A stretch of 63,648 nucleotides of DNA, counting the filler, from Octopus bimaculoides (taxonomy: Eukaryota): the NCBI RefSeq assembly GCF_001194135.2. It is 3 parts of 3 records of this genome, joined end to end, with 100 filler letters (N's around TTAATTAATTAA, not from the genome) between each part and the next. Parts side by side here need not be neighbours in the genome. Positions count along the whole stretch, not along the records: positions 19,229 to 45,109 come from NC_068983.1; 2 more parts are not named here. One strand, written 5' to 3'. Shown one piece after another: positions 19,573-48,114 of this stretch (its first letter is position 1; every line of letters starts with the position of its first letter). Both the position numbers and the translations under genes were made by a program. The notes under the pieces were generated by a model. It ran no database searches. It was not told the origin of the DNA and saw nothing but the letters and a program-made list of their open reading frames with translations.

Positions 19573-19599
19573 CATCTAAAAGAACCAATGAAGTCCCTG

Positions 19600-21235: not shown

Positions 21236-21253
21236 AAATTTACCTAAACAAAA

Positions 21254-21420
21254 GGCGTAGGAGTAGCTGTGTGGTAAGTAGCTTGCTTACCAACCACATG
21301 GTTCCGGGTTCAGTCCCACCGCGTGGCATCTTGGGCAAGTGTCTTCTACTATAGCCTCGGGCCGACCAAAGCCTTGTGAGTGGATTTGGTAGACAGAAAC
21401 TGAAACCCGTCGTATATATA
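21254..21420 (+). mobile_element. SINE head (same family as 6117)
   Basis: Near-identical to 6117-6285. Confidence 0.85.
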
Positions 21421-23609: not shown

Positions 23610-24340
23610 TTCTTTATTAGCTACGCAGGACCGAACACAGGAATAATTTTTCTTTTTCGAAATCGATCAAAAGGAAACGAAAACCTCTTCCTTGTTTTGG
23701 ATGTGTAAACAGGGAATTAACACAAAAGTTGTAGTTAACAATAAAAGTTTCCAATGGGGGGAGGAAATGTAATATTGACTTGGTTTATCTGTGGAAAGAA
23801 GACCCTATGGAAAAGAACCTCGGTAACCTCGGAAATGGAAAAGAAAAACATTAATATGGGAGCAAAGGTTAATGTTCAAGGTGGTTCCATCATTTATTCG
23901 TGCCATCCTTGACACATTCACCAAACTTTTGTTGAAACTTTCATTAGACAAAACTTCCCTCTCTATTCTCTCCTTCCTGTTCAAGTGATACTTGAAGAAA
24001 TTGATGAGAGGTTGGCCAGAGAGGAAAGTGTTTGTCTCTAAACCATTCACGCAATCCGCCACACACATTTTTTCACCATAGCCACCAGTACAATGAAAAC
24101 TGCCTTGCCTTCCCGGTTAAAGGAAGGTGGCGGGGCAATATTCACAATAGACTTGGCCGACAACCGAATTCGTCACACACGTGACAGCAGCCGCTCGACA
24201 TGAGCCCACAGGTCTGAAATGCTTGAACATAGCACGAGTGTGTGCAGAACGGTTTCGTCGCTCTGACCGCATTTCAGAAAAGTCGGTCAAGCATTTCTAG
24301 AACCGTGCCTGTAGAGCTTATCCTGAACAGGTAATGCTTN
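23610..24340 (-). mobile_element. L1/Tx1 LINE ORF2 3' end
   Basis: Minus strand: FLSGQPLINFFKYHLNRKERIEREVLSNESFNKSLVNVSRMAR, homologous to the 34560-34720 copy. Confidence 0.65.
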
Positions 24341-24949
24341 NNNNNNNNNNNNNNNNNNNNNNNNNNNNNNNNNNNNNNNNNNNNNNNNNNNNNNNNNNNN
24401 NNNNNNNNNNNNNNNNNNNNNNNNNNNNNNNNNNNNNNNATATATATATACTTATATTGGAAATGAGCTGCTTGCCCTACCTCAAGCAACATCACTTACT
24501 TCCTTGGGAATCCTTTTATCACATCAACACCAAATTTTTCTAATAGTTCCTCACATCCTATGTTGTCTGGCATCCTTTTAATGTCTGTATTTATTTTCCA
24601 AAACTTAAAAATGTTTTTGTATTTTTCACCTCCTCCATCTGTTTTTTTCTGAAAGCAGCATACACATGTGCCGCCCTATTTTGTTCGGATATCCTTTTGT
24701 ACGAACAAATCTTGCCGTCTTCCAACTTGTTAACTTCCGAATTAGCTCCTGATTGTCATCGTCCGTCAGTATACAAACGTAATTCATTTCACGGGGAGGG
24801 GAATTCTTTGTACTTTGTTGTGAATACGTTTCTTTTTGGATTGTATAAGAGGGAGGTGGGTGGGTTCGGTGTCTGTATGGTGGGGTGGGTCTCAAAATGT
24901 ATGGGTCGGGTGAGTAAGGTTTGGGGTTCCACATTACACTGTTCTTTTT

Positions 24950-25750
24950 CCTTCTGTAATTTTCCATTCTTCCTATCTTTCTCTTTTCTCCTCTTGCTTC
25001 TTTTCCGGCCTCTCGTCCATCATTTCCATTGTCTGCTTTTGTAAAGGGCAGTGTGTTCTAATGTGGCCTTTTTGGCCACATTTAAAACAACTAGGAATCC
25101 TGCCCTCCACCCACACTTTCAACATCAGATCTCCGATTGATACCGTCTCTGCCAGATTTTCGAGTGTCTCCGCTGCAGCCTGTACAATCAGGTCCATTCT
25201 TTGTTCTTTCCACAATGAGTTTTCTGTCTTTGTGGCTTGGAGGATGGCTACTTCTTTCTCACTTCCCATAAGAACAGCCGCCACGACCCAAGCCACATCA
25301 ATTTCCGGTGGAATACCCTCTTCTTCCCATATAAGTGGGTAGAAGGACCACTTTGTTTTTATTGTGTTTGTCGCGTTCTCTCTTGCTTTGTCTTCCGTCT
25401 TGTAATGGATTATGATGGTTCCGAATTTATTCCATCTGGCCAGATACGTAATGTCTGGTCAGACTGAGCACAATACCTTTTCTATAATTACAGCTTCTAC
25501 GTGTTCAATTTTTCCTTCCTCCACTGAGTACACCTTGTAAACTACAGTCTTCCTGTCTATTTCGCCCATTATCTTCTGGGGTGGTGACAGCTTAACGTCA
25601 CCACCTACTCTAGTTGATATTTTTTTCATATATTTCAATATTTGAGAGGTCTACCCGCTTTTTCTTCACTTCCGTTTTTAGAACTTTATCCATCCTTCCG
25701 ACAGCACAAATCAGTTCCTCCTCCGAAGAGGTCAATTTGCCATGGCTATC
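24950..25750 (-). mobile_element. LINE ORF1 (gag-like) remnant with CCHC zinc knuckle
   Basis: VWVEGRIPSCFKCGQKGHIRTHCP (C-x2-C-x4-H-x4-C). Upstream on the same strand as the Tx1 3' end. Confidence 0.65.
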
Positions 25751-26468
25751 TCTCGACTTTATCGAGAGAAAGCATAACTAGAAACCGCTGCTAATGCAGC
25801 ACAAAACAACTAACGATTCCAATAACAGTAATTTCAAACAGCGACTTCAAACGATAACTAACCTTCAGCTACCCAGAATGTACAAAAAAAAAAAATTTCG
25901 ACTCCGAACTCTGAACTCACTCGGATCGTTACTATTTATACTTTACTCGGACCAGTCTACCCCTCGCAAGGGGACTTGTAACTCTCATCCCAACACAATT
26001 AAAACATGGACCTCCAGAGAGGTGTAATAAATATTCATTAACACATTTAGTTGGTTTGTGACGATAAAATACCACATGTTAATGAATCGAAATTCAAAAC
26101 TACTGCTTTTGTAGAGACTTATGAAAAATAATTATTAATATCAGAATAAGCTTGAAATTAATGTAAAAGCCTATATTTCGAGCTCATATTCAAAAGTTAT
26201 TTGGAATTGTTAAAGTTTCAGATTAAAATGATTTGTTTGTAAAAATGATACTAAGCTACTAGAAACTTGAATATATGCTAATGAATATTCTGCATTGTCA
26301 TCTGAGCTTAGCAAATTATGGCAAATATTACCAAAACCAAGGTGAACTTTCCCACCAAGACATATGGAAGAAGAATATTAAGGTTAGTATAACATTAATA
26401 TAGTGGTCGACTATATTTGGTGTTTGAATGGCAATTGAAAATCAAATATTTTCTCTTTCTACTCCTAT

Positions 26469-26491
26469 TTAAACATATCTGTTTAAAACAT
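26469..26491 (-). CDS. Possible short terminal exon of the MAM gene (DVLNRYV*)
   Basis: A 69-nt intron (gtaagt ... ttctaac branch-like site ... ttaactcag|AT) continues phase 1 to a TAA. No homology support. Confidence 0.3.
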
Positions 26492-26560
26492 CTGAGTTAA
26501 GACGAAAGCATTAGAGTTAGAAACAGAAATTGATTAAACAGAATAGATTTAAAAACTTAC

Positions 26561-26890
26561 CTAAACCTGGACATTTATTTTTCGTGACGTTGATATAATC
26601 AAGCGAAACTGAACTACCAACAGCTTGGTAAAAGATACTGTTTATCCTTTGTGTCAGGAAAATAAATTTGGTAGGCATCTTTCTCTCAATATATACTTGA
26701 TATATTAGCCATGGGGTTGTACCTCGACTCACCACACTGAAAAGTGATTTCTTGCTAAATGCATTATAAATGGTCAGGTTACAACTACCGATTATCTTGT
26801 ATCTTATTTGCACACAACTATTGGTAATGTTTTCAGTCGGAGATGCCAAACCATGAGTATTGTATCTAGGAGAAGCTTGCATGTACACAT
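26561..26890 (-). CDS. MAM-domain protein, main exon of MAM repeat 2
   Basis: Minus strand: tttcttctccag|AT acceptor and TTA G|gtaagt donor, 330 nt, phase 1-1. (D)VYMQASPRYNTHGLASPTENITNSCVQIRYKIIGSCNLTIY...PWLIYQV...KFIF...SVSLDYINVTKNKCPGL fits MAM (YM.AS, L.SP, C...Y..G..L.I, W, SLD.I.V...C). Confidence 0.82.
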
Positions 26891-28242
26891 CTGGAGAAGA
26901 AATTTGAAAATATATTTATTTTGTAAGGAATTTATATTTAGTGTTACAAAATTCACCTCATAATATAAAAGAATATCTTCATANNNNNNNNNNNNNNNNN
27001 NNNNNNNNNNNNNNNNNNNNNNNNNNNNNNNNNNNNNNNNNNNNNNNNNNNNNNNNNNNNNNNNNNNNNNNNNNNNNNNNNNNNNNNNNNNNNNNNNNNN
27101 NNNNNNNNNNNNNNNNNNNNNNNNNNNNNNNNNNNNNNNNNNNNNNNNNNNNNNNNNNNNNNNNNNNNNNNNNNNNNNNNNNNNNNNNNNNNNNNNNNNN
27201 NNNNNNNNNNNNNNNNNNNNNNNNNNNNNNNNNNNNNNNNNNNNNNNNNNNNNNNNNNNNNNNNNNNNNNNNNNNNNNNNNNNNNNNNNNNNNNNNNNNN
27301 NNNNNNNNNNNNNNNNNNNNNNNNNNNNNNNNNNNNNNNNNNNNNNNNNNNNNNNNNNNNNNNNGTATGACAATATAGATTAGATAGAAATGACTAAACT
27401 ACTTATCTTCACTAGTTGACTGAGGACGAATCAACTCAGTCAAAATTCTATTCCTTATCTATTCTTTAAGTGATATCCATTTATAGGTAGGAGAATCAAG
27501 TTATGGATACGGTACATTGAGTGTGATAAATACCAACTAAAACTACTGATTGTTAAAATGATGTCTCACTGACTAGGTCGGATCCGAATCCCAGATAGTT
27601 TTCTAGTAAAATAACTAAAGAGAACAGTAAGAGGAAAATATTTAGCGTAAGAAGTCTTGCCACCAAATTTGTAAATATGTTTGACTACATATTTTTCTAA
27701 AGGTGCATTTCTGTTACGCTTATCTGTATGCCTGTTTGTTGCTTCTAAGGAGATATAAGTAACATAGAGAAGTGAACAGTAAAACTAACATCCTTCACAA
27801 AATCCTGCCTTTGTTTTTGTGTGCATACTATGACAAGGCTACCTAGTATGATAATAATGATGATGATATAGATTAGGTAAAGGTATTAAACAACTGAACA
27901 TGTCTTAAAATTCTTTTATACCTACCGAAAGACATTGACGGTTTTATGTAGAATTTATAAGGTTGAATTTATAGGAATATGGGATCTTTTCCTTTTGGCC
28001 GGCACATAGAAAAAATAATTTTTTGTAACTAAACACTTTCAAATTTCGTATACTGGTAGAATGTGTCATTTAAAACATCATTAACCCTTGGTGTTTTTAA
28101 GAAAATTCTTTATTTTCGAAGTTATTTCGTGTTAAAGTTGTCGTAGTTCGGTACTTTCAACCAATCAATGACGTCTATTGAGGTGAAAACAATTACTGCT
28201 GTGGTTTGTCAACAAGACGTTCTGGCGATGTAAATTTACTCT

Positions 28243-28770
28243 GTCACTGTTATTTATGACATCGTTCGTACGTTTGTACTGGTTTTAGCTTTAGGGTTTT
28301 AGGGTTAGGGTTCAGGTTTTAGAGTTAGGGTTAGGGTTTTAGGGTCAGGATTAGGGATAGGGTTTTAGAGTTAGGGTTAGGGTTAGGCTAGGGTTTTTTC
28401 AGATACTATTTTCGGAAATACATTTTTGCCCCCTCCCCCTCTAATTTTTTCATTTTCCCCATTTTCCGTAGCTCTAACCCTAAAATCCCAACTCTAACCC
28501 TAACCCTAAAACCTCACCCTCAACCCTAACTCTAAAACCCTAACCCAAATCCTAAAACCCTAATATTAACTCTAAAACCCTAACCCTAACTTTAAAACCC
28601 TAACCCTAACTTTAAAACCCTAACCCTAAAGCCCTAATCCTAACCTGACCCTAAAATCCTAACCCTAACCCTAACTCTAAAACCCTATCCCTAACCCTAA
28701 AACCCTAACTCTAAAACCCTAAAGCTAAAACCAGTACAAACGCACAAACGATGTCATAAAAAACAGTGAC
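28243..28770. repeat. Foldback element with degenerate head-to-head telomeric repeats, (TTAGGG)n-spacer-(CCCTAA)n
   Basis: TTAGGG/TTTTAGGG units at 28291-28393 and CCCTAA units at 28472-28722. Flanks are mirror images (gtcactgtt.tttatgacatcgtt.gt.cgtttgtactggttttagct versus agctaaaaccagtacaaacgcacaaacgatgtcataaaaaacagtgac). Confidence 0.85.
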
Positions 28771-29552
28771 AAACGAAATATATACCGTCGATNNNNNNNN
28801 NNNNNNNNNNNNNNNNNNNNNNNNNNNNNNNNNNNNNNNNNNNNNNNNNNNNNNNNNNNNNNNNNNNNNNNNNNNNNNNNNNNNNNNNNNNNNNNNNNNN
28901 NNNNNNNNNNNNNNNNNNNNNNNNNNNNNNNNNNNNNNNNNNNNNNNNNNNNNNNNNNNNNNNNNNNNNNNNNNNNNNNNNNNNNNNNNNNNNNNNNNNN
29001 NNNNNNNNNNNNNNNNNNNNNNNNNNNNNNNNNNNNNNNNNNNNNNNNNNNNNNNNNNNNNNNNNNNNNNNNNNNNNNNNNNNNNNNNNNNNNNNNNNNN
29101 NNNNNNNNNNNNNNNNNNNNNNNNNNNNNNNNNNNNNNNNNNNNNNNNNNNNNNNNNNNNNNNNNNNNNNNNNNNNNNNNNNNNNNNNNNNNNNNNNNNN
29201 NNNNNNNNNNNNNNNNNNNNNNNNNNNNNNNNNNNNNNNNNNNNNNNNNNNNNNNNNNNNNNNNNNNNNNNNNNNNNNNNNNNNNNNNNNNNNNNNNNNN
29301 NNNNNNNNNNNNNNNNNNNNNNNNNNNNNNNNNNNNNNNNNNNNNNNNNNNNNNNNNNNNNNNNNNNNNNNNNNNNNNNNNNNNNNNNNNNNNNNNNNNN
29401 NNNNNNNNNNNNNNNNNNNNNNNNNNNNNNNNNNNNNNNNNNNNNNNNNNNNNNNNNNNNNNNNNNNNNNNNNNNNNNNNNNNNNNNNNNNNNNNNNNNN
29501 NNNNNNNNNNNNNNNNNNNNNNNNNNNNNNNNAATACAGAATATTTGTTTAC

Positions 29553-29663
29553 CATTTGTTGATCCGCTTACGTTTCCTGATTGTACTCTTTCCCATTTAC
29601 TGTACATAAAATTGTAATACTGGCATATCATTGGGTTTGAGAAGTTACAGGAAATGCTTCTGG
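29553..29663 (-). CDS. MAM-domain protein, N-terminal exon of MAM repeat 2
   Basis: Minus strand: ctttctcactaaag|CC acceptor and AAT G|gtaaac donor, 111 nt, phase 1-1. (A)RSISCNFSNPMICQYYNFMYSKWERVQSGNVSGSTN fits C.F....C.Y....W.R and has N-glycosylation sequons. Confidence 0.8.
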
Positions 29664-29989
29664 CTTTAGTGAGAAAGAGAAAAAAAGGCAATCTTCGTTA
29701 GCGCAATGTTAAGATATTAACAGTAATAATATACAACTTGTATTTTACATAGCACATAAACATAAGCAGCGATAAGTAGCGTTAAAGAATAGCACCAATT
29801 GGAGGTGAGTACTTTTTTCGCTGTGTAATATTAACTTTGAAAGAAAGTAGTGACTAAAACAATGGTTAGTCAAAGTTATTAATTAATGGAAAACCGTATC
29901 GGTCAGGCGATTGGTATCTAGATATAGTAGTCTGTGGACCAGTGGATAGGGATGGCCTAGGTTGTTCAGAATTCAAATTCATCGGTTAC

Positions 29990-30860
29990 ACAGACCACGC
30001 CTTTGTGATCTGAGCGGGCGACGTGTATAAACAAAGACCCGTTCCTTGACGCGTCACCACGGTGCGCCAAACTTAGTGAAACCTAATTAGCGAAATTCCA
30101 CTTTCTATTTAGGGGACGTGTTTCACTGGTCAGCTTCTCAATTTGCTGACAATATCCGCTGGGTGACGGACTAGAGAAGCCGTGGTTGATGATGCACAGA
30201 CATGTGTGCAGCCTGCGAGATCTTGAGCAATTTTTTGATGGTGAACAGGTATGATCGCCAATTTTCGGACGGGTCTCTTGATAAAGGAACAAACTGGGTC
30301 AAATAAAGACCAACACATAGTAGTCATCTGAGATGTCATCTAATGCTCAAACTCTTCCATGAGTTGAGAAGTGTGGTCAGTAGAAGTTCAACCATAGCAT
30401 CTTATGAGGGTTTGTAATGTGAAAGTGAGACGACGTTCTCAGGGAGGCTCTAGACGTTGACGAAAATCAATTGGCTGGTCTGCTCCGGAGGACTTCCTGA
30501 CATCCATGGATAACTCCCAAAATTCCTTACCTAGCAGTGCTACTGGAAAATGGAAACCTCCCCAAGATATACGCAGAGGAAGAAACTGTTCTGTACGCAC
30601 TCGTTCACTGCTCGAATATAGATAATTTGCGGAGTTTTGTCGAACAACTGATGTCGGGTGTAGGACGGATATAACTAATACATAGCACATTGTGGAGAGC
30701 GCCCTGGCACCTTCCTTTGGCCGAGGTGGACAAGTAGTATTTATTTCTGTGGTGACCTTCGCGAAAGTAGTTGTGGTCCAGATTGAAAGCGCTAGAGTCA
30801 AACATATTCCATTTTGAACAAACCTTTATCAGCATTTCAAGTTTCCCTTGAAAAGAAAAC
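29990..30860 (-). mobile_element. Possible BEL/Pao LTR retrotransposon 3' remnant
   Basis: FIKRPVRKLAIIPVH resembles the RPxxKLxxL C-terminal motif of BEL integrase. Otherwise heavily degraded. Confidence 0.3.
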
Positions 30861-30863
30861 AAG

Positions 30864-30911
<48 letters not shown>

Positions 30912-31394
30912 TGTTACCCTCCTGAAAATTTCTTAAAGAGTAGATGAGTGCAGCGACATGATCTAAATAAATAATCCCACTCTGAGCACATATCTGATTT
31001 AGGGAAGACCAGATGGGAAGGCACGTGCTTTAGTGTTCAGGTTTTGAGATATTTCCACGAGTAGAAATTTTAATTTCCCTCTTTTGAGGAATTATTTTTG
31101 GAATCTACTGTTGCTGGTCTTCTTTTTACTTACTTTTTGAAGCTATCTCACAGTGTATCGTGCTGTGCCATCCTCATAATTTTTGCGAAACCTCGGTGAT
31201 TACTAATGAAAATATTATCATTAAGGTTGTAAGACACATGTCTCAAAGTTTCGGGCCTTGCGCCTAATGTAGAAAGGATTATCATTNNNNNNNNNNNNNN
31301 NNNNNNNNNNNNNNNNNNNNNNNNNNNNNNNNNNNNNNNNNNNNNNNNNNNNNNNNNNNNNNNNNNGTTTATTATTATTATTATTATTATTATT

Positions 31395-32130
31395 TCTTTT
31401 TATCACAGGTTTTGTTGGAACTCATTGAGTCTTGCATGCGTAGCAGGCTTGCTACCTGCTATCCGCTCTTTCCAGCTATCTAATACTTTCCTGATTATTC
31501 TGGCCATACCAAGAAGGCCAAACTTTTGTAACAATTCTACTGGGCACTCTATTCCAGTTGCCTTGATATTCCTCTTGATGCCTTCTGATACTGTCCCCAA
31601 GGACCCAGAAACAGTTGGCACTATCTTCACCTTCTTCAGTTTTCATTGCCGTACTATTTCGTACTTAAGAGAGTTGTATTTATCTATTTTTGCGCCTTCC
31701 TTCTTGACTATTTGTCGGTCAAAAGGGCATGCAACATCAACCATATAGCACCTATAGTGCATCTTGTCCACTAACATTAGGTCCGGTCTGTTATACTCTA
31801 GCACCTGGTCTGTTTGGATTGAGAAATCACAGAGGATTTTGCTCGTCTCCGAATCCATAACTTTCTGCGTTTTGTGCTCATACCACGTCTTGCATCTTTC
31901 TAGCCCCCATTTTTTGCAATTTTCCAATGGAGCACTTACACTACTTGATCACGTCGCTACAACTTGTATTGCTTTTGGGCATGTCGTTTGTGATATGGGC
32001 AATGGCTTTATCCACAGCGGAGACACTTGTTCATTCCAAACGTTGACCCTCCATTTCGTGGTCAAAGATTGGTCTTGCGCTGCCAGTATAGTGCTTTCAG
32101 TCTCTTTTTTTAGTGTCCCCTACATGCGAT
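31395..32130 (-). mobile_element. R4/Dong-like LINE, restriction-like endonuclease domain and 3' end
   Basis: KTWYEH...CDFSIQTDQVLEYNRPDLMLVDK...DVACPFD..IVKKE..KIDKY..L...IVP.V.GSLG...LLGMARIIRKVLD. The 3' end runs into (AAT)n. Confidence 0.75.
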
Positions 32131-32219
32131 GAGAACTCTCAGCTTATTTTGCTGGGTATGATGCAAATTGTCAGCTGTCAACAGACAACAGACTAAAGTG
32201 ACACTTGTTTACTTTTCAA

Positions 32220-32760
32220 GCTTCATGCAATGCTAATTTTTGTAGGTGTTCTACCTTCACCCTCGCACCAATATTTTTTAGCCATGTTGCTTGTTGAATG
32301 CTGCGTGCCAAATACTATTGGTATCACGTCTACTCTTGTCATTGACCACAACATTCGTATTTCCCACTTCAAATCGTCATAGCTGTTTATTTTTTCTCTT
32401 TTCTCATTGAGCCTGTTGTCACCGGAGCATGCTAAATCAATTATCATGCCTGTTCTTTCTTTTATATTCACAACTGTGTCCGGCTTCTGATGTCTTGTCA
32501 GGTAGTTGCACTGAATCATCGCATCCTACAAGATTTTGCAATTCCTCATTTTCGTGACTCCTTCTGGGATTTGCCCATACCACGTCTTTGCACTTTGTAC
32601 GCCGTGATTTCCACAGAGTTCCCAATGGATCATCCTTATAACTGCTGAAATTCGGGAGTCCATGAGCAATTGCACAAGTTGCTGATCACCTGGTTTGGAT
32701 GGTACGCCCTATGAATTCTATGTACTCATGCCAGATTTGTTTGGCGACCTCTTAGCAGTC
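32220..32760 (-). mobile_element. Second R4/Dong-like RLE fragment
   Basis: HQKPDTVV..KERTGMIIDLACSGDNRLNEKREKINSYDDLKWEIRMLWSMTRVDVIPIVFGT. Confidence 0.7.
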
Positions 32761-32769
32761 GTCTACCCC

Positions 32770-34768
32770 AACTGGTAACAGAACGGGAGAATTCCTAGTG
32801 TTGTTAGCAGGGCGTGTGGTGACACTGCTGAGGAAAGACGTCGACCACGGGGATTTACTAGGAAATGTTCGGCCCATAACTCTGTTAAACACAGAGTTTG
32901 AGGATTTGGCCAAGGTGTTAGCGAAAAGGCTGGCGCTTTTCGTAGGTTACCTGATCGGAGAAACGCAGATGTGCGAAATCTCGAGTAGGTCTATCCATGA
33001 TAGCCTCCATCTTATGCGATACACCAGAGAGATGGCTGGGACCAAAGCTGGCTTTGGAGGTTCTCTGATCAATTTGGATCAACTGAAAGAATTCAATAGA
33101 GTCGGCCATCACTGCTTGGAATCCGTCCTGAAAGCAGGCGGTTTCGGACACACTTTTAGAGGATGGATCACTGCAATGCACAGAGACACCTGTTCGGTGG
33201 TCAGTGTAAATGGTCACCTATCGGAGTTGTTTGGCGTCGCACGCTCGGTCCGTCAGCGCTTCCCGCTGTCATCTCTTCTGTATTTGCACTCGAGCCACTA
33301 CTGCGAAAGTTAGAACAGCTAAGGGGCATCCCTTTTGAAATGGGACAGGGAAGGGCAATGTCGACATACACGGACGCCGTTACCATCACAGTCTCGGACG
33401 CCTCCGAAGTGTAGACGGTCGCCCCCATTCTAAAGGAATATTAGTCGGTTGCAGAGGCTAAAATCAACGACGACAAATCGGTAGGTTTGCAGTTGGGCTC
33501 CTGGAGAGGCAGGATGATACAATCGGACGGCGTCATCGTACGTCATCGAGCAGTTGGACCAGTTAAACTGCTCGGGGTCTGGTTTGGTCCCGACCTCCAG
33601 TTTGATAATAACTGAGATGTGGTGGCAAACATTGTGACCAGTCTTACCCAGAAATAGGCAGAGAGGAAGTTCTCTGTAAAAGGTCGGGCAAGGGTGGAAA
33701 ATGCGTACATCCTCTCCATTATTTATTGTCTGACCGTCGTACCTTGTCTTGGTTACTGCTTGACTAATTGGGAGCGTCTCTTATTTAAATTCTTGTGGAA
33801 GGATGCGTTCCAATGGTCAGGTGCTCAGTTTGTTGCCAGCATCTTCTGAATGGTGGATTAGGTGTGCCATGGTTCCTAATGAACAGACACGTTCTTAGGT
33901 TACTCCATTTGCAACGATTTCTGGATGGTGAGCGCTTGTAGGCTCCGTTTGTGTGTGGGATCCGTCTTACCGCAGCTCATCCTTCTGACGGAGCTGCAGT
34001 CCTGGGTGAAAAAAAGACCGACGTCGAGCAACAAGGCAAAAGCTCGCTCGATCTCACAGCCCTCTAACAGTCAGGCAATAGAATCGGAGGATGTTCCACT
34101 TTAGAAATTCATAGGGGATGAGTGGAGAGGAAGTGTGACGACATTCTCGGGGAGAATCTGGGCACCGACGAGTAAGAATTGGCTAGTCTGTTCTGAAAGA
34201 CTTTCCGTCGGGGACTATCATGGATAATTGTCTGATATCTTTGACCTGACAATGCTACCGCGGGCACTACCGATTCGAGATAAACTCTACAGGCACGTTT
34301 TTGTTGCCAGACGGACTTGTCCGAGATGAACGCTCTGAGAAGAACTCGTTCTGCATGCCCCTATTCAGTGTCCAGACATTGCTGACTTGTGGGGCTATGT
34401 CAAACAGCTACAGTCACGTTTGGGACGGATTCATCTGTCCGACGAGTCTGTAGGGATGACTTCCCCGCCACTCTCCCTCAATCAGGCAAGCAAGACAGTT
34501 TTTCTTTGCCTCGTGTCTGTGGCAAAAGAGGTCGTTTGAGGTAGAAGGCTGAAACGCATGAGGACAGATTCATTGCTCTTTGGTAGAGCACTGATTGACT
34601 TCTTCAAGTTTCACTTGCAAAGGAAATTGAGATTGGAGTGGGAAGTACTTTCTTCAAGTGAATTTATTGAAAGGTGGGTGAAAGTTGCGAATATGGCAAG
34701 AGTGGATGGTACCTCTCCGTGTATACCTGTAAGTCGGACAGAAGGAATTGGAGTGGGCAATGAAAACA

Positions 34769-34770
<2 letters not shown>
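32770..34770 (+). mobile_element. L1/Tx1-clade LINE, RT domain to 3' end (pseudogenised)
   Basis: NVRPITLLNTEFEDLAKVLAKRL...SRSIHDSLHLMR...LINLDQ.KEFNRVGH (RT subdomains), RSVRQ..PLS.LL, and a 3' end shared with the other copies. Multiple stops. Confidence 0.8.
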
Positions 34771-34821
<51 letters not shown>

Positions 34822-34927
34822 GAGTGAGAGAGCAGTGCATGCCATCAAAGTGACACTGGGGTAAAATATACGAAGTCCAGTATACCCATTATGACTACCT
34901 GTCCGATAAGGGTACACCAGGCACATG

Positions 34928-34961
<34 letters not shown>

Positions 34962-35400
34962 GAGTGAGAGAGCAGTACATGCAATCAAAATGACACTGAG
35001 GTAAAATATACGAAGTCCAGTATACCCATTATGATTACCTGTCCGATAAGAGTACACCAGGCACATGCATCACAACCATATCTGCGCGACATGGGGATCT
35101 CATATCAAGGTTAACAGCAGGTGCGGCCCAGTTAGATTTTCTTCAGGTTGAACAGCCAATTCTGCTTAAAAGGTCACTGAATAAGGGCTGTTTAAAGATG
35201 TTCATTCACTCATGTTTCTCCGGGTGAATCATCCAAACCCCAAAGAATTCCTCTCAACACAAGGCTTTTATGCTTCTCCACTACTTCTGCTCGTGATCAG
35301 ACATGCACATACCGTGAGCCGCTAAGGGACATACTCAACTGGTTAAAGTTAAACAACTGAGAAGCAAATCTTTGATATTGAACAGAATATTTGCTGTAGC
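34822..35400 (-). mobile_element. LINE-like 3' end with (AAT)n tail; terminal ~110 bp tandemly duplicated
   Basis: 34822-34930 and 34962-35070 are near-identical, each preceded on + by (TAT)n. Confidence 0.55.
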
Positions 35401-36285
35401 CCAACTTTTATACCAACCACATATTGAACCAACGAAGAAGTCATCTTGAGTTTAATTCACTTTTTTACAAATAAGGCTAAGTCTATATGTCATAACCTTC
35501 AACATGGTTGCAATATATAAAATATAAAACTTGTTTCCATCCGTTTTGCTAATTTCTGCTTGACAACCAAAGAACATTGTCTATTTTGTATCTAGTAAAT
35601 ATAATATGACATAGAAATAATTTTACACACGCACGCACACACATACAAACACACACAAGCACATACACAGACACACACACAATTATCAATTTATAGAATG
35701 TTGTGTAAGTATTGCTTAATGCTATGTTTGAAATTCAAATTTCTTAAATGACTGATATCTGAACGAAAAATATGAAGACAAAAATTTTATAACAGAACTA
35801 AATTTGGACCTATTGTAAATCTAAAACAATTAAGAATTCAAAGACCTTAATAAGTTAATCAAAGGCCTCCATTGTTCGACTTATCCAACAAAATCACTGC
35901 TTCGTTTTGCTTGAAGGAATAACCTAGAACAAAACGCAATAGTGAGCCAAATTTGATATTATAATGAATTTCGATATTCGAAATGAATACAGAAGATATA
36001 ATTTGGGAAAGATGTGTAACTATGCTTGCCTCAGTTCCCAGCAACATCTGTGGCTTTATGGTTAGTTACAAAAAGGATAACAATAAAAAAAAGTAAATTA
36101 TTTTTACGCCAGTGTGAAACAGAAAAGCAGAGAAACAATGCTATTAATAGGTGAATATACATGTGTTTAGACGGATAGATTGTGTGAAAGATAAATAGGT
36201 AAGTACATAGATTGGTCATTAGGTAGCTAGATAGACAAAAAGTTTGACAGATAGATCACTGCGACAGGGAAGTAAATAATTTTAC

Positions 36286-36480
36286 CTTGACAATATTCGT
36301 CTTTGAAACCAACATCAAGCAGGGCAATATGGCCATTAAATCCAAACCCATGTGTAGCAATAAATTGATAAGTATACTTTCTGCTGTAGTTGGGTACATT
36401 AACACAAGCAAAATTCCAGTTTCTGCTCTCAATTTCACCAGATTCTTCAAACAACTCTATGTTATTTCCATGCGAATCCT
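36286..36480 (-). CDS. MAM-domain protein, exon with the C-terminal part of MAM repeat 1 (5' part possibly lost in the 10-N gap)
   Basis: Minus strand: EDSHGNNIELFEESGEIESRNWNFACVNVPNYSRKYTYQFIATHGFGFNGHIALLDVGFKDEYCQ fits the MAM C-terminus (W...V......Y.F......G.IALxDV.F...C). Donor CAA G|gtaaaa is phase 1 and in frame with exon 29663. Confidence 0.8.
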
Positions 36481-36493
36481 CTGNNNNNNNNNN

Positions 36494-36576
<83 letters not shown>

Positions 36577-36584
36577 GCATGGTT

Positions 36585-37217
36585 TTGCAAAAGGAACCTT
36601 ACTTTTCTTTCACTACACCATCCCATGCATTCCTCTCAGAGTATGTCCTCGTATCGTCTGTAATACGCGGTAAAGGTAGTTCCTTCATCCGGTTTGTACT
36701 GAAATTTTTCGACAGAGTTTGCAACACCGACTGCTGAAAATGATTCTGCCGTACTTCTCGACTGCAGTAACAACTCTGTTAAATTCTGTAGTTGCTGCTG
36801 CTACTCTTGTTGTTTTACGACTGCTTTCAGTAACTCTTCCATTTCGGTACTAGTTTCAGTTTCAATATTGTTCGAATCCTCGGAACTCTTCGAAACCTTG
36901 ACGCCACTGTTGTATCAGTGGCGATATGGTCCGAATCCTCGTCGCCTCTGTTGTATCAATAGCGATATTGTCTGAATCGTCGACGCTACTATTGTATCGC
37001 ACTTTTGACATACGATATAACGGGATGATAAATAACGTCCTCGCAAATCGTTCCACTCAAGATACACAATACTTGTAATTACACTCGACAATACGCAACT
37101 CTCGGCTTTACACAGCTCTCCTAACTCTCTCCCCACACTCTCTGCGCATCTCCATTTACATTGTGGCACAGTCCATTAGGACCCAACCAAATAGGGGTGT
37201 TCTACTTCCACACAACA
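36585..37217 (-). mobile_element. Gypsy/Ty3 LTR retrotransposon 5' fragment: LTR, PBS and truncated gag
   Basis: The LTR starts TGTTG (37217) and ends CAACA. PBS-like (T/A)GGCGACGAGGAT is complementary to the tRNA-Ser(GCU) 3' end. gag from 36842: MEELLKAVVKQQ...VANSVEKFQYKPDEGTTFTAYYRRYEDI, like Gypsy gag 'F.YDP..G.TF..W..RYED'. Confidence 0.7.
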
Positions 37218-37499
37218 GCTTTATTTCTCTAATTCTCTAATTATACCACAATAGTATACACTACTGCAGCACGACAAAATTGATGAATACTTCGTTAGTT
37301 TGAAATGCTGAATGCAAATTCTATTGTGGATCTATTGGCAACATTGCGATTCAGACCGAAGTCTCTTTTACTTATATTTAAGCTTACAAATTTAATTTGA
37401 GTGCAACTTTGGCAGGCTAAATCAGGATAGCTTCATTAATGCAACTACTTCAATGCTTTAAACGACATATCCAAAATTCTGAAAGTTACCACAACAAGA

Positions 37500-37594
37500 T
37501 TTGATTAACTTGAACTTTTATAATAACGCCATTGAATGCACATGTGCTACTGCTTTTCTGGCTGGTTGCGACGTTTCATCACTCATCCATATCA

Positions 37595-37638
<44 letters not shown>

Positions 37639-39290
37639 ATATACATATATATGTATATGTATGTATATAGGTAGAAGGTTGAAAAGGAATACACGAGTAG
37701 TTGATATATATGGAAAAAAAGTCAAGGTAGAAAATGATAAAATAATTTTATAAAAAAAACATTTCAGTACTTGTTTCAGTTATTGAGACTTTTTCAATTG
37801 AAAGTATGGAAAACAATTAAATTTTAGAGAAATTAAATGAAAAGTATTTTAAAAGAATATTTGCATTGTATTCAAATACAAGAGGTATTTTCCTTGTTTC
37901 TGCCTGTCTCTGTCTCTCTGGCTTACTTTTGTGGGTACGAGGTCGTTGTGAATTCTTAGCAGAGAAGAAGAAGAAGAAGAGGAAGAAGAAGAAGAAAATG
38001 CGGGAGTGCTATGATAGTAGTAGGTTGTTAAATGGTCAAGTGCCATGAAAGTGACTTGTGGATGGTAGGAGTGATTGAATTCTTGAGATATTTCTTTTGA
38101 AGGTATTGTTTATAATATTTGCATAGGTATTATTCTAAACAGCAGTAGTAGTAAAGTAAGGAAGGAGTTGGCGAAAAAGAAAAAGGAAACAGAGAAGAAG
38201 AGAAAGAACAATAAGAGAATGCAGGACGGTAGGGTAGTAGTAGGATGTTAACTGATCAAGTGACATAAAAGTGGCTCGTTGTGGATTACAGCAGTGATTG
38301 GGACTGTTTTTAATGAATTCTTGGGTAGCTCTTTTGAATGTATCATTTTTGATATTTACGTGTGTGTTATTCTAAGGTCGTGGTGGATATGTCATTTGTT
38401 GTAGATGTATTCAAAAGTGGTCTGTATTTTGTAATAAAGAGAGACTCTACTAATTCGTTGGCTACAGGTTGTATCGTCCCTGAATTGATAGAGGGAACAA
38501 ATTCTGAAGCTTGGATTTTCGTTATTGGCGCAAATGTCGATGTGTTGGCTGAATGCTATTTTTCTGTTTTTTTTTTTTAAATTTGGATCTGGGATCTGTG
38601 CAGAGCCATTCTTTGACGTAGACTGTTTTTTGTTTGGCCTATGTATTGCTCTTGACACACAGAGCAGGTTAGTGCATATACCAGGTTCTCCGAAGCACAT
38701 GTGAAGCTGATTTTCACTGTGAATCGTTGTGCCTGTTTGAAGGAGAATTCTGATCCCTCAATTAAATCGACGCATATCCCACAGTTGGGTCTTCCACATT
38801 TTTTTACTGACGGCTTCAGTGTTGTTGTTGAGCGTATTCGGGCATGTGTTAGCAGACTTTGCATAGATTTAGGCTTTGGGCTATATGTTGCTTTTTATGA
38901 TGGTGTGTGCTTGGAGGATTAAGTTCATTCTGTGGTCCGTTTTTAGCAGGGAAACGTTTTGAGAGATGGTGTCGAAGGCATTATTGTTAAGGGGGTTGTA
39001 TGTGGAGATGTATGATAGGGCTTTTGATGAAAGCGTAAATATGTTTATAATTAGAAGAGAAAAAATTTGACTATACCTGAAGTTTTCCATTGTTTTTTGT
39101 GATATAATATGTAAAGTAGAGACTTTTGCCTGCAGGAGCTCGGATATTTGAAAATACAAGTTTTGACGTGTGTCCAGGTTGGCCCTTTGAAGATTGTGTA
39201 TACATATAATAATCTGAAAGAATAAAAAGTTTATATAAATAAAAAAAGAAAACAAAAACAACATCTAATCTAAGTTCTTTTATTACCAAA
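37500..39290 (-). mobile_element. Penelope-like element, RT C-terminus and GIY-YIG endonuclease remnant
   Basis: ORF 38577-38864: KKCGRPNCGIC...FTCASENLVYALTCSVCQEQYIGQTKNSLRQRMALHRSQI (GIY-YIG). Upstream LSYISTYNPLN..F..I..N...L. Confidence 0.75.
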
Positions 39291-39436
39291 GGGGATGTTA
39301 CAGGAAGGGAATTACATTATTTCTTCTTCCAGCTATTCTAAATATGACGATCTGTATAGGCAAAATAAATATTGCTACACGGAACATCACAGTTACACCA
39401 GTAGCGGCAACGGCAACAGTAATAACAACAACAACA

Positions 39437-39449
39437 ACTACTACTACTG

Positions 39450-39518
<69 letters not shown>

Positions 39519-39521
39519 TAC
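39437..39521. repeat. (TAC)n microsatellite
   Basis: Near-perfect trinucleotide run; gives a spurious poly-Thr/poly-Tyr ORF. Confidence 0.95.
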
Positions 39522-40959
39522 AGTTCTTGAATTTAGCAAAATATCTAAATTTGCATATTATGTATTTGCATATAGAGATTTTCTCTAACCCGATGTACTA
39601 GGTTAATATCTGTATTGATTTCGAAGATATTTTAATTCAGAGATGTAATTAATATTACTTATTATAAAACATAATAAAATAAGTTATCTCTGCATGTTTT
39701 AAGTTGCGAAACAATTTTTGTGATAATAGATTTTCCAATTGTTAAATAAATTTTATCATACTATTTACACCCCCCCCCACACACACACCTACACACATAG
39801 AAGATTTGAGAACTTTCCACCTGAAATCCGAAAAAAGACTTTTGGTTTGGTTCACCAATCCTATTGGCTATGAATACATATTTATGGCAAAATAGTTATT
39901 CTCCTGTGAACTCATATCAAGGAAATATTCAGCAAATGTGCAGTTCACCCTGATGTCAGAGAGGTGATACTTAATCTATAAAATTTGCGTTTCTGTTATG
40001 CGTTTTGAGAAACATTTTACTTGATCTTTAGAGAAGATAGCAGATTTTGCTCAGAATCGAATATATTCCATTTTTGTCTAGAGTAAGGTGTTGCTTGTTT
40101 TTACCAAAATTTACCATTTATTGCAGCCAATATAGTGCTTTGATTTGAAATATTTTGGAATAGTTCCATTTTATATTACGTTTTCATTCTTTTGGCTTTC
40201 AATTTGTTTCATTTTTAATCTGTTAATATTCTTACAAATTAGATCACTGTCAAGTATATAAAAACTGAATTGTAGAATAATGGATAATGTTAATAACCCT
40301 TGGTGTAAAATATATTTTTCTAATCTAACCCTAACTTAAAAGTAAAAACCACTTTGAATTCGTAGTCTGTCTGGATGCACATTATTGGAAATTATTACTA
40401 TACACTAAAAAATAGTGATTTTCCCCACTCGCTACATTTGCCATCCGAATATGTATTGATCACTGCCAGTTAAAAAATGTAAGGTATAATGACTCCAGCG
40501 AAATATGTAACTAGCCATCGCCGATCATCAACCTGTAACGCTTTATTAAGCGAAATTTCTTGTATTGGTGAGTTTGAAACAAACCACAGGGGAAAATCTG
40601 GTAAGTTTGTAATTATATTACATAAATATCAGAAAATGGGCTTCTTAAGCCACACACTTTACGATTATAATATCTTCTATAGATACAAGTCCAATTTTAT
40701 ACAAGGTATATTTAATCAATCCCAAATATTTCTATTATCAACCTCATCCAGGTTCACATCCAAATTTCAGTAGGATTAAATTCTAGTTATCCCAAGCTGT
40801 TTCTCAGAGAAGAGAGGTGACATTAGAGAGGAAATGTACAACATACAATTTTCTTTACAAGTTCATCAGCGTTGTAGACAATGGAACACTTAATATTCAC
40901 CTAAACATTAGTTAGATAATAGTTTATGGAATATAAAATCATGATTGTAAGTAATTTAC

Positions 40960-41130
40960 CTGAATCGGAATATGAGAAGTTTTCCGGATAGGGTAAGAAA
41001 TGAGATCGATAATAAGACACATCCTTGTAAGATCCTCGTTGCCATGTATATTCACTATTCTCTGGACATTCCACGTTATAATCACAAAAATGTGGTTCTT
41101 TAAATTCACAGAAATGATGCGTAATACCAA
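40960..41130 (-). CDS. MAM-domain protein, exon A (N-terminal part of MAM repeat 1)
   Basis: Minus strand: ctttcaacag|TT acceptor and TCA G|gtaaat donor, 171 nt, phase 1-1. GITHHFCEFKEPHFCDYNVECPENSEYTWQRGSYKDVSYYRSHFLPYPENFSYSDS fits the MAM start C.F....C.Y......W.R. Confidence 0.7.
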
Positions 41131-41164
41131 CTGTTGAAAGAAATTATCAAAATATTGATTTCGA

Positions 41165-41370
41165 AATTTAGTACAATGCCAGCAATTTTGGAGGAGGGGT
41201 TAAGTCAAATACATCGACCACAATACTCAACAGATACTTATTTTATCAACTACGAAGAGCTGAAAGTCAAAATCGACCTTGGCAGATTTTGAACTCAGAA
41301 AGTAAAAACGGACAAAATACCGCTAAGCATTTTACTCGGCTTGCAAAAGATTCTGCAAGTTCTCTGCCTT
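41165..41370 (-). mobile_element. Third SINE family (TTTCATCCTTTCGGGGTCGATAAAATAAGTACC core, Deu/Nin-domain-like)
   Basis: Homologous copies at about 12890-13062 (-), 55490-55700 (+), 56860-57130 (-), 58260-58400 (-) and 60110-60270 (+). Domain name is from recall. Confidence 0.6.
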
Positions 41371-42389
41371 ATGATCAAAATATTAGTAGTTTTGCAAGAC
41401 AAAATGGTTAAATAGTAAAATCATAAAGTTTACTAAAATCATGGATTCTTAAGCAAAATATGACAATATCTGTTACGTCTTCTATTGAAGACGTACACAG
41501 ATAAAGTTAGTGTTAAAACATTTAACGTAATAAATAATATTAACTGCTGTATAAAAAAAAACTATCCTCATCAAATATGTAAGACTAAAAATTAACAATT
41601 GCAAAGAACATCTATATTTTCAAGAATATATTGACTAATATGAATGTCATACACTGCCAAAATCCCATTTGCATAGATCTGAAAAGTCTACATTTTACTT
41701 GAAATATTCTATTTGTAAAATTTTATATATTTCTTATTCCATTTAGAAACTTTCATTCCTTTTCTTTGCTTAAAATAATATAGAATCGTTAGAAAAAATA
41801 TTTCCTAATGAATAGAGTTCCTATTTCATTTCTTCAGTAATTTTTCATCATATCAAATATTATTAAGATTTTGGTAACTAATATGAATGATTACGTGAGA
41901 TAATGCTTAATACTCGTATTCATATGTAAATTTTACTTGTTTGAGAGTTATACGATCTAACGTTAGGACTCAAATGATGGACTCTTTGATTGGACATAAC
42001 TGGCTCTTTTATATGAGTATATGAGTACATGGCTCAATGACTCAGAAGTATATTTCTCAAGCACAAAATTCTGGAGTCAATCCCACTTTATTAGCATTTA
42101 GAGCAAGTCTCTTCAAAATTTTGAGTTACTTCAAGTTATGTAAGTGAAATTAGTAAATGGAAACGTGTGTAATACATGGCACACGTAATCTGAGTGCCCA
42201 CATCATCACAACGTATCATATTGAGACTGTCTGTCTGACGACAGTGGCAAATCCCNNNNNNNNNNNNNNNNNNNNNNNNNNNNNNNNNNNNNNNNNNNNN
42301 NNNNNNNNNNNNNNNNNNNNNNNNNNNNNNNNNNNNNNNNNNNNNNNNNNNNNNNATATATATATATATATTTGGCCAGATAGACTATA

Positions 42390-43430
42390 CAAAAGCGGAC
42401 AGGTGAAAGAACAATTCGAAGGGCAGGCAAAAGTGGCGTGTCATTCGTGACCTTCTTTCCTCAGTCAAATTACCATCTGTCCTTACTATTTTAGGCACTT
42501 ACACATGAAACAGTTCGACCTGGTTGCCACAAAAAACAGATGCAGGGAATAATATACGCCATTCACAAGGAAGGATGCAGAGCAGATGACCTGTTCCTCT
42601 GATCTCACACATCAGGAATGCGATGGAACGAATAGTTCGAAGGCAATTAATTGCATTCATTGAAGAGAATAACTCGCTGACTGACACCCAGCACGGTTTT
42701 CGACCAGGTGGAAGCTACTAGACACAACTCTTGCAGCACTACCCCTAGGTGCTAAAAGCAGCTGCTTAACTTTGGACATAATATATCTCGACTTTGCAAA
42801 AATCTTTGTATGATATGTCACAAGCTGCGTACTCTTGGCATAGTTGGAAAACTTGGATAATGCCTACACGATTTTCTAAAAGATCGAAGTGAGGTAGTGG
42901 TGACGATCGAGGCCACCTCCGAGGAACACAGATAATAAGTGGCATTTCACAGGGCAGTATCCTGGGGAAGGTGCTATTCATAGGCCCTCTCAGGCAAGCC
43001 CTCAACTGACAAGGTCGCCACTCCTTCTAGCTATGCAGATACTAATATTTCTCAGAAGCTACAGAGTCCATGAGACGTTGCCTATCGACAACGGGAGTTC
43101 GACGCAACATATACGTGGTTTGAGGAAAATAACATGCAGTTTAATGCTGAAAAATCTCACGCCCTGCGCTAACAACACATGCAGCTCAATGAAAAGAACA
43201 TGAGATACACTGGTCCAAGAGGGATTGCAATCCCTGAATCCCAATCAGTGCGTGACCTGAGCATCGACATGACTAATGATGCCACTTTCTAATTGCATAT
43301 TACTAAGTTGGCAATAAAATGCAGACGCTAAGCCGGATGGATCCTTCGGACTTTCAAAACGAGAAAACAGGAAACCACGAAGGTCTTCTGGAGGACATTC
43401 ATCCTCAGCCGTCAGAATTACTGCTTCCAA
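42390..43430 (+). mobile_element. CR1/L2-clade LINE RT fragment (degenerate)
   Basis: TQHGFRPGGSY*TQLLQHY, DIIYLDFAK, QGSILG, SYAD, FNAEKS, VRDL.IDM and GWILRTFKTR motifs. Confidence 0.75.
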
Positions 43431-43435
43431 CAGTT

Positions 43436-47761: not shown

Positions 47762-48114
47762 TTCGTAAATAATATATATGTACATTTTTATATATAGATA
47801 TTGTATATGCATGTATAGGTATACATGCGCTTATGTGTGTATGTGTGTGGGTGTGTAAGTATGGGTGTGTATGTATGTATGTGTTTGTGTATGGATATGT
47901 TCGTGTATGTGTGTGCGTGCATATGTGTGTGTATTAATACATTTAGAAATATATACATGCATATCTGATATATTTAATATGTATAAAAATTAATAAATGA
48001 ATTACATAAAATGAGGAGTCACGTAGTCACCTGCATTAGCTTACATCTGTTTCTGATATTAGAAACTGCGCATCAAGCGGTGAATGACAAAATAGAATTC
48101 TTTATTTATTGAAG

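What the first reader, a model, noticed from the sequence alone, without database searches (positions are those of the whole stretch)
26469..41130. Hidden minus-strand gene for a divergent tandem two-MAM-domain protein
Seen in sequence: four exons (41130-40960, 36480-36286, 29663-29553, 26890-26561) are all phase 1-1 with canonical GT-AG ends, and the last three splice in frame without stops. Established knowledge: the spacing C.F....C.Y...W.R / YM.AS..L.SP..C...Y..G..L / W...V...F...G.I(A/S)LD.I.V...C is the MAM fold signature, and phase-1 symmetric exons typify shuffled extracellular modules. Inference: with many N-glycosylation sequons and no TM or kinase exon found, this may be a secreted or lineage-specific MAM-only protein (possible end ...KCPGLDVLNRYV*). 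The sequence is far from canonical meprin/neuropilin/ALK MAMs.
Basis: partly seen in the sequence, partly recalled or inferred. Interest (0 to 1): 0.7.

Follow-up and report, generated by a model that had tools for sequence, protein, structure and literature searches.

The report
Octopus MAM/LDLa gene fragment, two MAMs
The minus strand really does carry exons for two tandem MAM domains, but they are an internal piece of an ordinary, already annotated octopus family of large MAM/LDL-receptor-A mosaic proteins, not a stand-alone novel MAM-only protein.

Summary
The four exons are real coding exons, and the MAM call holds. Pfam MAM scores 85.7 bits for the corrected product. An AlphaFold model of an 85-95% identical paralogue matches enteropeptidase, PTPRK, meprin and SR-C MAM structures.

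The gene model needs three corrections:
- A fifth exon (39213-39077, phase 1-0) carries the middle of MAM1 and was missed.
- The 'CAG acceptor' of the 36480 exon is coding sequence. The true acceptor and at least 7 nt of the exon lie in the 10-N gap, so this exon is phase 0-1.
- The proposed terminal mini-exon has no support.

The closest relatives are two Octopus bimaculoides loci on chromosome CM046603.1. [quoted passage not shown] Both are colinear with the window through the introns, at 82-98% and 71-89% nucleotide identity. In the closer locus exon E splices to an LDLa exon 9.7 kb downstream, beyond this piece's edge. That locus also has further MAM and LDLa exons on both sides.

The next relatives (38-50% identity) are about 2000-residue SRCR-MAMxN-LDLa-trypsin proteins of O. 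sinensis, O. vulgaris and Argonauta.

Verdict: an ordinary new paralogue of a known kind. Whether this copy is still functional is open: dN/dS is about 1 and one subfamily-conserved cysteine is lost.

The parts
40960..41130 (-). Exon A, 171 nt, phase 1-1. It encodes the N-terminal part of MAM1 (GITHHFCEFKEPHFCDYNVECPENSEYTWQRG...).
   Evidence: The frame is open and the flanks read caacag|TTGGTA...ATTCAG|gtaaat. tblastn to P0001 gives 63% identity with one indel. The family HMM covers positions 2-39.
39077..39213 (-). Exon B, 137 nt, phase 1-0. It encodes the middle of MAM1 (DYYMYTQSSKGQPGHTSKLVFSNIRAPAGKSLYFTYYITKNNGKLQ).
   Evidence: tblastn gives 89.6% identity to P0001 and 82% to P0002. 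The flanks read ctttcag|ATTATT...CTTCAG|gtatag. Adding it raises the MAM1 Pfam score from 29.2 to 63.9 bits with full-length 1-158 coverage.
36286..36493 (-). Exon C, the C-terminal part of MAM1 ((L-x-S)EDSHGNNIELF...LLDVGFKDEYCQ). The readable part is 36483-36286. The 5' end and acceptor are hidden in the 10-N gap 36484-36493. Phase 0-1.
   Evidence: L001 shows ttttcag|CTTGAATCAGAGGATTC where the window has N10+CAGAGGATTC. Identity is 85.5% to P0001. The donor reads GTCAAG|gtaaaa.
29553..29663 (-). Exon D, 111 nt, phase 1-1. It encodes the N-terminal part of MAM2 (ARSISCNFSNPMICQYYNFMYSKWERVQSGNVSGSTN).
   Evidence: Identity is 94.7% to P0001 and 92% to P0002.
26561..26890 (-). Exon E, 330 nt, phase 1-1. 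It encodes the body and end of MAM2 (DVYMQASPRY...LASPTENITNSCVQIRYKI...DYINVTKNKCPGL). It ends in an open phase-1 donor, GTTTAG|gtaagt.
   Evidence: Identity is 88% to P0001 and 72% to P0002. The family HMM scores 90.7 bits. In paralogue L002 this donor joins an LDLa exon 9.7 kb downstream.
26469..26560 (-).
   Evidence: Read-through of the donor hits a stop after GKFLNLFCLINFCF. The sequence is shown. No homologue carries 'DVLNRYV'.

Best explanation
The piece holds five consecutive internal exons (A-E, minus strand, spanning 41130-26561) of a cephalopod gene. The source is most likely Octopus bimaculoides or a very close relative. [quoted passage not shown] Shown: the exons, their splice sites and frames, the MAM identity, and the colinearity with two annotated O. 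bimaculoides paralogues that lie about 155-250 kb apart on the same chromosome.

Inferred from the closest paralogue and from relatives at 38-50% identity: the mRNA continues upstream into at least one more MAM domain. It continues downstream into LDLa-MAM-LDLa, and possibly SRCR and a C-terminal trypsin-like protease domain. The two MAM beta-sandwiches would then be part of the glycosylated, disulfide-bonded extracellular stem of a large secreted or membrane-anchored mosaic protein.

By analogy with the enteropeptidase heavy chain and with meprin and RPTPmu MAM domains, such a stem mediates oligomerisation or macromolecular recognition and has no catalytic role of its own. The LDLa exon is missing here because the piece ends 7.3 kb after exon E, whereas in the paralogue that intron is 9.7 kb.
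For: - Frames and splice sites.
- Pfam MAM: 85.7 bits in two stretches for the five-exon product, and 63.9 bits for MAM1 alone over the full model. MAM2 alone scores 26.7 bits.
[quoted passage not shown] P0002 (LOC106877508) is 72-92% identical.
- DNA colinearity through the introns: 82-98% with L002 and 71-89% with L001.
- L002 carries an upstream MAM exon, the LDLa exon, a third MAM start and a second LDLa exon. L001 carries a further MAM exon downstream.
- The whole 354-residue unit aligns end to end with internal repeats of 1200-2066-residue proteins of O. sinensis, O. vulgaris and Argonauta hians. The scanned relatives P0004, P0005, P0008 and P0012 carry MAM, LDLa and Trypsin, and three of them also SRCR. 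P0003 (O. vulgaris) showed LDLa and Trypsin but no MAM hit.
- The AF2 model of P0001 (pLDDT 87.9) matches enteropeptidase, PTPRK MAM-Ig-FN, meprin alpha/beta and the SR-C MAM domain.
- An HMM and phmmer scan of every six-frame segment of the piece finds exactly these five exons and nothing else.
- All five frames stay open despite 57-87 substitutions against the paralogues.
Against: - No upstream or downstream exon is visible in the piece. Continuation into LDLa or trypsin is inferred from paralogues and not seen for this copy.
- No transcript or junction evidence for this copy or its two closest paralogues was available. P0001, P0152 and P0002 are gene models.
- dN/dS against the paralogues is 0.76-1.65, not significantly different from 1, so purifying selection is not demonstrated.
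- The window copy has Ser where all six closest relatives have a Cys (GCSV becomes GSSV). This leaves Cys244, its co-occurring and likely disulfide partner, unpaired.
- The source species is not proven.
Confidence: 0.72

Rival explanations
1. A decaying or partial duplicate. The five exons are a recently copied segment of a neighbouring MAM/LDLa gene. It is no longer expressed as a functional protein, and not enough time has passed for stop codons to accumulate.
For: - dN/dS is 1.65 against L002 (49.5 non-synonymous and 7.5 synonymous differences) and 0.76 against L001. Neither differs from 1 (Fisher p = 0.31 and 0.26).
- Exon identity to L002 (83-98%) is no higher than identity in some introns (up to 98%).
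- A Cys conserved in the six closest relatives is lost.
- No exact or near-exact protein or transcript is in the collection.
- The locus is riddled with transposon remnants, and intron D-E carries an 824-nt insertion absent from both paralogues.
Against: - All five exons keep open frames, all readable AG/GT sites and correct phases.
- Assuming roughly 4-5% of random substitutions create a stop, the 57-87 substitutions seen would leave all frames open only about 2-7% of the time. This is my estimate from the counts.
- There are no frameshifting indels in the exons; the single indel, in exon A, is 3 nt.
- The canonical MAM cysteines and tryptophans are all kept.
Confidence: 0.22
2. One reading: a stand-alone, secreted, lineage-specific protein made only of two MAM domains, ending shortly after exon E.
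For: - NCBI's model for the paralogue LOC106877508 (P0002, 280 aa) is MAM-only and ends by read-through just after exon E.
- No LDLa, TM or protease exon is present in the 25.9-kb piece.
Against: - The P0002 model is truncated by the assembly. Its exon A equivalent falls in a 100-N gap, its start Met lies in intron sequence, and a further MAM exon lies 9.7 kb downstream in L001.
- Exon A opens in phase 1 without a Met or signal peptide.
- Exon E's phase-1 donor is conserved, and in the gene models at the closer paralogue L002 it joins the LDLa exon.
- Every relative down to 25-30% identity is a multi-domain mosaic protein.
Confidence: 0.05

Closest known systems
[quoted passage not shown]
   Same: It has the same five-exon MAM-MAM structure. 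Exons B-E are 85-95% identical at the amino-acid level and exon A is 63% identical. Colinear introns are 82-98% identical at the nucleotide level.
   Different: It is not the same locus: there are 57 coding substitutions, a 3-nt indel in exon A, and an 824-nt intron insertion found only in the window. Its LDLa exon and the following exons are visible, while the window's are beyond the piece edge.
Octopus bimaculoides LOC106877508, 'uncharacterized protein' (P0002), about 155-250 kb from the former on the same chromosome, in opposite orientation
   Same: Exons B-E are colinear. Amino-acid identity is 72-92%, and nucleotide identity is 71-89% including introns. It supplies the true acceptor of exon C.
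   Different: It is more divergent. Its annotated model is truncated because exon A falls in a gap and the 3' end is read through.
[quoted passage not shown]
   Same: The window's unit aligns end to end with their internal MAM-MAM-LDLa segment. It shares the 'LASPTENITNSCVQIRYKI' block and the extra Cys pair of MAM2.
   Different: Identity is only 38-50%. These proteins also have an N-terminal anchor or signal, SRCR, 7-8 MAM domains, several LDLa domains and a C-terminal trypsin domain. None of these can be seen in the window.
Vertebrate enteropeptidase (TMPRSS15) heavy chain; meprin and RPTPmu/PTPRK MAM domains
   Same: They share the MAM beta-sandwich fold. Enteropeptidase is the top structural match to the model of the paralogue (E about 1e-12), followed by PTPRK, meprin and the SR-C MAM domain. 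Enteropeptidase is also a MAM/LDLa/SRCR/trypsin mosaic, a point that rests on established knowledge.
   Different: Sequence similarity is marginal: PDB phmmer gives E=0.011 at best. No CUB or SEA domains appear in the octopod relatives, and their MAM domains occur in long tandem arrays.

Membership tests
MAM domain (Pfam PF00629) | Profile HMM score at or above the gathering cut-off of 26.4 bits | tested here: met
   MAM1 (exons A+B+C) scores 63.9 bits over model positions 1-158. MAM2 (exons D+E) scores 26.7 bits over 1-158. Both together score 85.7 bits.
MAM domain (Pfam PF00629) | Four conserved cysteines and the conserved Trp after the C-x-F...C-x-[YWF] start | tested here: met
   MAM1 has C7, C15, C131 and C169. 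MAM2 has C176, C184, C233 and C314. The tryptophans align with invariant columns of the 19-sequence family alignment.
MAM domain (Pfam PF00629) | Beta-sandwich (jelly-roll) fold matching solved MAM domains | tested here: met
   This was tested on the paralogue P0001 (85-95% identical over exons B-E), not on the window product, which the tool does not accept. The AF2 model has pLDDT 87.9 and pTM 0.85. Foldseek hits are enteropeptidase, PTPRK MAM, meprin, and the SR-C MAM domain at TM 0.69 and rmsd 3.4 A.
[quoted passage not shown] | An LDLa module (PF00057) following the MAM domains in the same reading frame | not testable with these tools
   No LDLa exon is present in 19229-26560. In the closest paralogue it lies 9.7 kb after exon E, and the piece ends after 7.3 kb. 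P0001 scores 35.2 bits for LDLa. The window's exon E keeps the phase-1 donor this junction needs.
Octopod SRCR-MAM-LDLa-trypsin mosaic serine proteases (S1 family with an enteropeptidase-like stem) | C-terminal trypsin domain (PF00089) on the same transcript | not testable with these tools
   The relatives P0003, P0004, P0005, P0008 and P0012 all have it. Nothing of the kind is in the piece. In L001 a Trypsin gene model spans the locus, but on the opposite strand.
   Exon A begins in phase 1 with no Met. No signal-peptide exon was found in 41131-45109. Exon E ends in a donor site. The proposed terminal mini-exon has no support from homologues.

The most novel reading that the evidence does not exclude
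The window copy, XP_052822097.1 and LOC106877508 may form a young octopus-specific cluster of MAM-MAM-LDLa units. Under this reading the cluster has come loose from the ancestral protease gene and is evolving under diversifying rather than purifying selection (dN/dS at or above 1, with frames kept open). That would fit a family of secreted recognition or mucus proteins. MAM/LDLa proteins are reported in Octopus vulgaris skin-mucus proteomes (PMC11431876), although nothing links those proteins to this locus.
Probability: 0.12. Interest if true: 0.35.

Novelty: new member of a known kind. Interest (0 to 1): 0.12.

Why it matters
It matters little beyond annotation. The result shows that short 'MAM-only' or 'uncharacterized' gene models in the gap-rich O. 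bimaculoides assembly are fragments of large MAM/LDLa mosaic genes. It adds one unannotated paralogue to that cluster. It also gives a corrected five-exon structure that could guide re-annotation.

If the near-neutral or diversifying evolution of the cluster were confirmed, it would be a modest example of lineage-specific expansion of extracellular recognition modules in cephalopods.

Tried and rejected
- Searched the piece for LDLa cores (D-x-S-D-E patterns) and further MAM starts by regular expression. Only the two known MAM starts turned up.
- Scanned every six-frame stop-free segment with a family HMM and with six full-length relatives. Nothing appeared beyond the five exons, and no upstream exon lies in 41131-45109.
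- Looked up the exon-E ORF as an exact product to identify the source sample. It is not on record.
- Ran a PDB sequence search. It gave only marginal hits, E=0.011 and 0.14, so fold comparison was used instead.
- Considered that the window might be the same locus as L002 in another assembly or haplotype. Rejected: nucleotide identity is only 82-98%, with 57 coding differences.
- Considered an orthologue in O. sinensis or O. vulgaris. This is unlikely, because their best annotated relatives are only 38-50% identical, and the pattern of N gaps (10, 100 and variable lengths) matches the O. bimaculoides loci. It is not proven.
- The literature search found only generic mentions of MAM/LDLa proteins in octopus mucus proteomes.
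Full report
**1. Observation**

On the minus strand, the four stated exons are each free of stops in the frame that starts at their third base. All are flanked by AG and GT. The piece has 37.5% G+C and 5.7% stop triplets. Stop-free segments average 18 codons, so a spliced 314-codon open frame has a chance of about 1e-8.

MAM2 alone scores 26.7 bits and the incomplete MAM1 29.2 bits, against a cut-off of 26.4. The core observation is therefore real.

**2. Corrections to the gene model**

A protein search found two relatives:
- P0001, 354 residues, with the architecture MAM-MAM-LDLa.
- P0002, O. bimaculoides LOC106877508, 280 residues.

*A missed exon.* tblastn of both against the window gave five exon matches, not four. 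The extra one is 39213-39077 and encodes 'DYYMYTQSSKGQPGHTSKLVFSNIRAPAGKSLYFTYYITKNNGKLQ'. Its flanks read ctttcag|AT...CAG|gtatag, so it is phase 1-0. With it, MAM1 covers the whole Pfam model at 63.9 bits, and the full product scores 85.7 bits.

*A wrong exon boundary.* Exon B ends in phase 0, so the next exon cannot start in phase 1 at 36480. The window reads N10+CAGAGGATTCG. The real acceptor and at least 7 nt of the exon are hidden in the gap 36484-36493.

*The other gaps.* The other three gaps lie in introns. Homologous proteins pass from exon C to D to E without extra residues, so no coding sequence is expected in them.

*Phases.* At the level of whole domains, both MAM modules are still bounded by phase-1 junctions.

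*The proposed end.* Exon E ends ...GGT TTA G|gtaagt. In P0001 and P0152 the next residues are V-CPPGTIKC..., an LDLa domain scoring 35.2 bits in Pfam.

**3. What the locus belongs to**

*Position of the paralogues.* Its locus (L002) and that of P0002 (L001) lie on the same chromosome, CM046603.1. They are about 155-250 kb apart and in opposite orientation.

*Colinearity.* The window is colinear with both, introns included. Nucleotide identity is 82-98% with L002 and 71-89% with L001. It is therefore a third, non-identical copy. It is most likely a paralogue in the same species, because the N-gap style is the same and O. sinensis and O. vulgaris have no close annotated counterpart. That point is an inference.

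*What surrounds the MAM-MAM unit in L002 and L001*:

| Feature | Locus | Coordinates |
|---|---|---|
| MAM-body exon upstream of exon A | L002 | 7965-8015, cut by a gap |
| LDLa exon, 9.7 kb after exon E | L002 | 48003-48143 |
| Start of a third MAM | L002 | 52189-52317 |
| Second LDLa exon | L002 | 55527-55646 |
| Further MAM exon | L001 | 29488-29814 |

*Why the NCBI model looks MAM-only.* The exon-A equivalent in L001 falls in a 100-N gap, which explains why NCBI's model is truncated.

*Why no LDLa exon is seen here.* The window piece ends 7.3 kb after exon E, so the absence of an LDLa exon is what a cut piece would show.

**4. Wider family**

An exhaustive HMMER search with P0001 gave 404 hits at E up to 0.001. 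After the O. bimaculoides copies, the best hits align over the whole 354 residues with internal repeats of large proteins. These include O. sinensis XP_036357547.1 (2040 aa), O. vulgaris CAI9719525.1 and Argonauta hians GAB1606841.1.

The five relatives scanned against Pfam (P0003, P0004, P0005, P0008, P0012) all carry LDLa and a C-terminal trypsin domain. Four of them show MAM arrays and three show SRCR; P0003, the O. vulgaris protein, returned no MAM hit. Read directly, the O. sinensis protein (not itself scanned) has the order N-terminal hydrophobic segment, SRCR, MAM array, LDLa and a C-terminal trypsin domain. In that protein the window's unit corresponds to residues 832-1134.

**5. Fold**

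An AlphaFold2 model of P0001 was built from a 19-sequence alignment. It has mean pLDDT 87.9 and pTM 0.85, and shows two beta-sandwiches followed by a small LDLa module. Foldseek against the PDB ranks enteropeptidase first (E about 6e-13). PTPRK MAM-Ig-FN, meprin alpha/beta and the S. frugiperda SR-C MAM domain (TM 0.69) follow.

By sequence alone, the PDB matches are marginal. So 'divergent' is fair, but the fold and family are ordinary.

**6. Is this copy functional?**

Against L002 the five exons carry 49.5 non-synonymous and 7.5 synonymous differences, giving dN/dS of 1.65. Against L001 dN/dS is 0.76. Neither differs significantly from 1.

In MAM2, the six closest relatives share an extra Cys pair (C-x-L-T ... 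G/V-C-S/E) that is absent in more distant relatives. The window keeps the first Cys and has Ser at the second.

On the other side, all frames, phases and readable splice sites are intact despite 57-87 substitutions. All canonical MAM cysteines and tryptophans are kept.

I therefore favour a still-coding internal gene segment (0.72). A decaying duplicate is less likely (0.22), and a stand-alone MAM-only protein is unlikely (0.05).

**7. Mechanism (inferred)**

The two MAM domains would form part of the N-glycosylated extracellular stem of a mosaic protein. There are 7 sequons. MAM domains in meprin, RPTPmu and enteropeptidase act in oligomerisation, adhesion or substrate recognition; this rests on established knowledge. 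No catalytic role is expected for this segment.

**8. Verdict**

This is a new paralogue of a known, annotated family. Interest is low.

Noticed in passing
window 27969-28792 (intron D-E): An 824-nt insertion absent from both paralogous loci. It consists of two inverted arrays of degenerate telomere-like TTAGGG/CCCTAA repeats, bounded by inverted terminal sequences (tgtcactgtt...gtactggttttagc / gctaaaaccagtac...cagtgaca). It looks like a foldback or MITE-like element and adjoins the 740-N gap.
   Followed up: partly
window 38577-38864 (-), 32798-33313 (+), 43453-43734 (+), 24973-25296 (-): Transposon remnants in the introns and flanks. They are a GIY-YIG domain ORF (23 bits; my guess is Penelope-like), a reverse-transcriptase fragment (RVT_1, 29.2 bits, just under the cut-off), a Mos1/mariner HTH_48 domain (44 bits) and a CCHC zinc-knuckle ORF.
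   Followed up: partly
L001 1-29827 (O. bimaculoides CM046603.1:35150288-35180114): A gene model with a Trypsin domain (197 aa) spans the whole LOC106877508 locus on the opposite strand. L002's gene runs toward this region on that same strand from about 155 kb away. The trypsin exons could therefore belong to the same very long gene as XP_052822097.1, with LOC106877508 nested antisense in an intron. This is untested.
   Followed up: no
L001 3092-3191 and 10001-10050; P0002: NCBI's LOC106877508 model starts at a Met inside intron sequence because the exon-A equivalent falls in a 100-N gap. It ends by read-through of the exon-E donor. The annotated 280-aa 'MAM-only' protein is an assembly artefact.
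   Followed up: yes
P0003 (O. vulgaris CAI9719525.1): Pfam reported no MAM hit at E up to 0.001 for this 1205-aa protein. Yet its residues 26-364 align with the MAM-MAM-LDLa unit at 38% identity. The MAM domains of this subfamily seem to sit at the edge of the Pfam model's reach.
   Followed up: no
window 36494-36580 and 22500-22600, 37620-37700: There are long (TG)n / (TGTA)n / (TA-TG) microsatellites. One abuts the gap that hides the exon C acceptor. In L001 a similar (GTAT)n tract lies about 40 nt upstream of the acceptor, so the real gap is probably nearer 50 nt than 10.
   Followed up: partly
L002 58745-59488: A PIF1-helicase ORF (247 aa) lies just downstream of the XP_052822097.1 model. 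It is probably a Helitron remnant.
   Followed up: no
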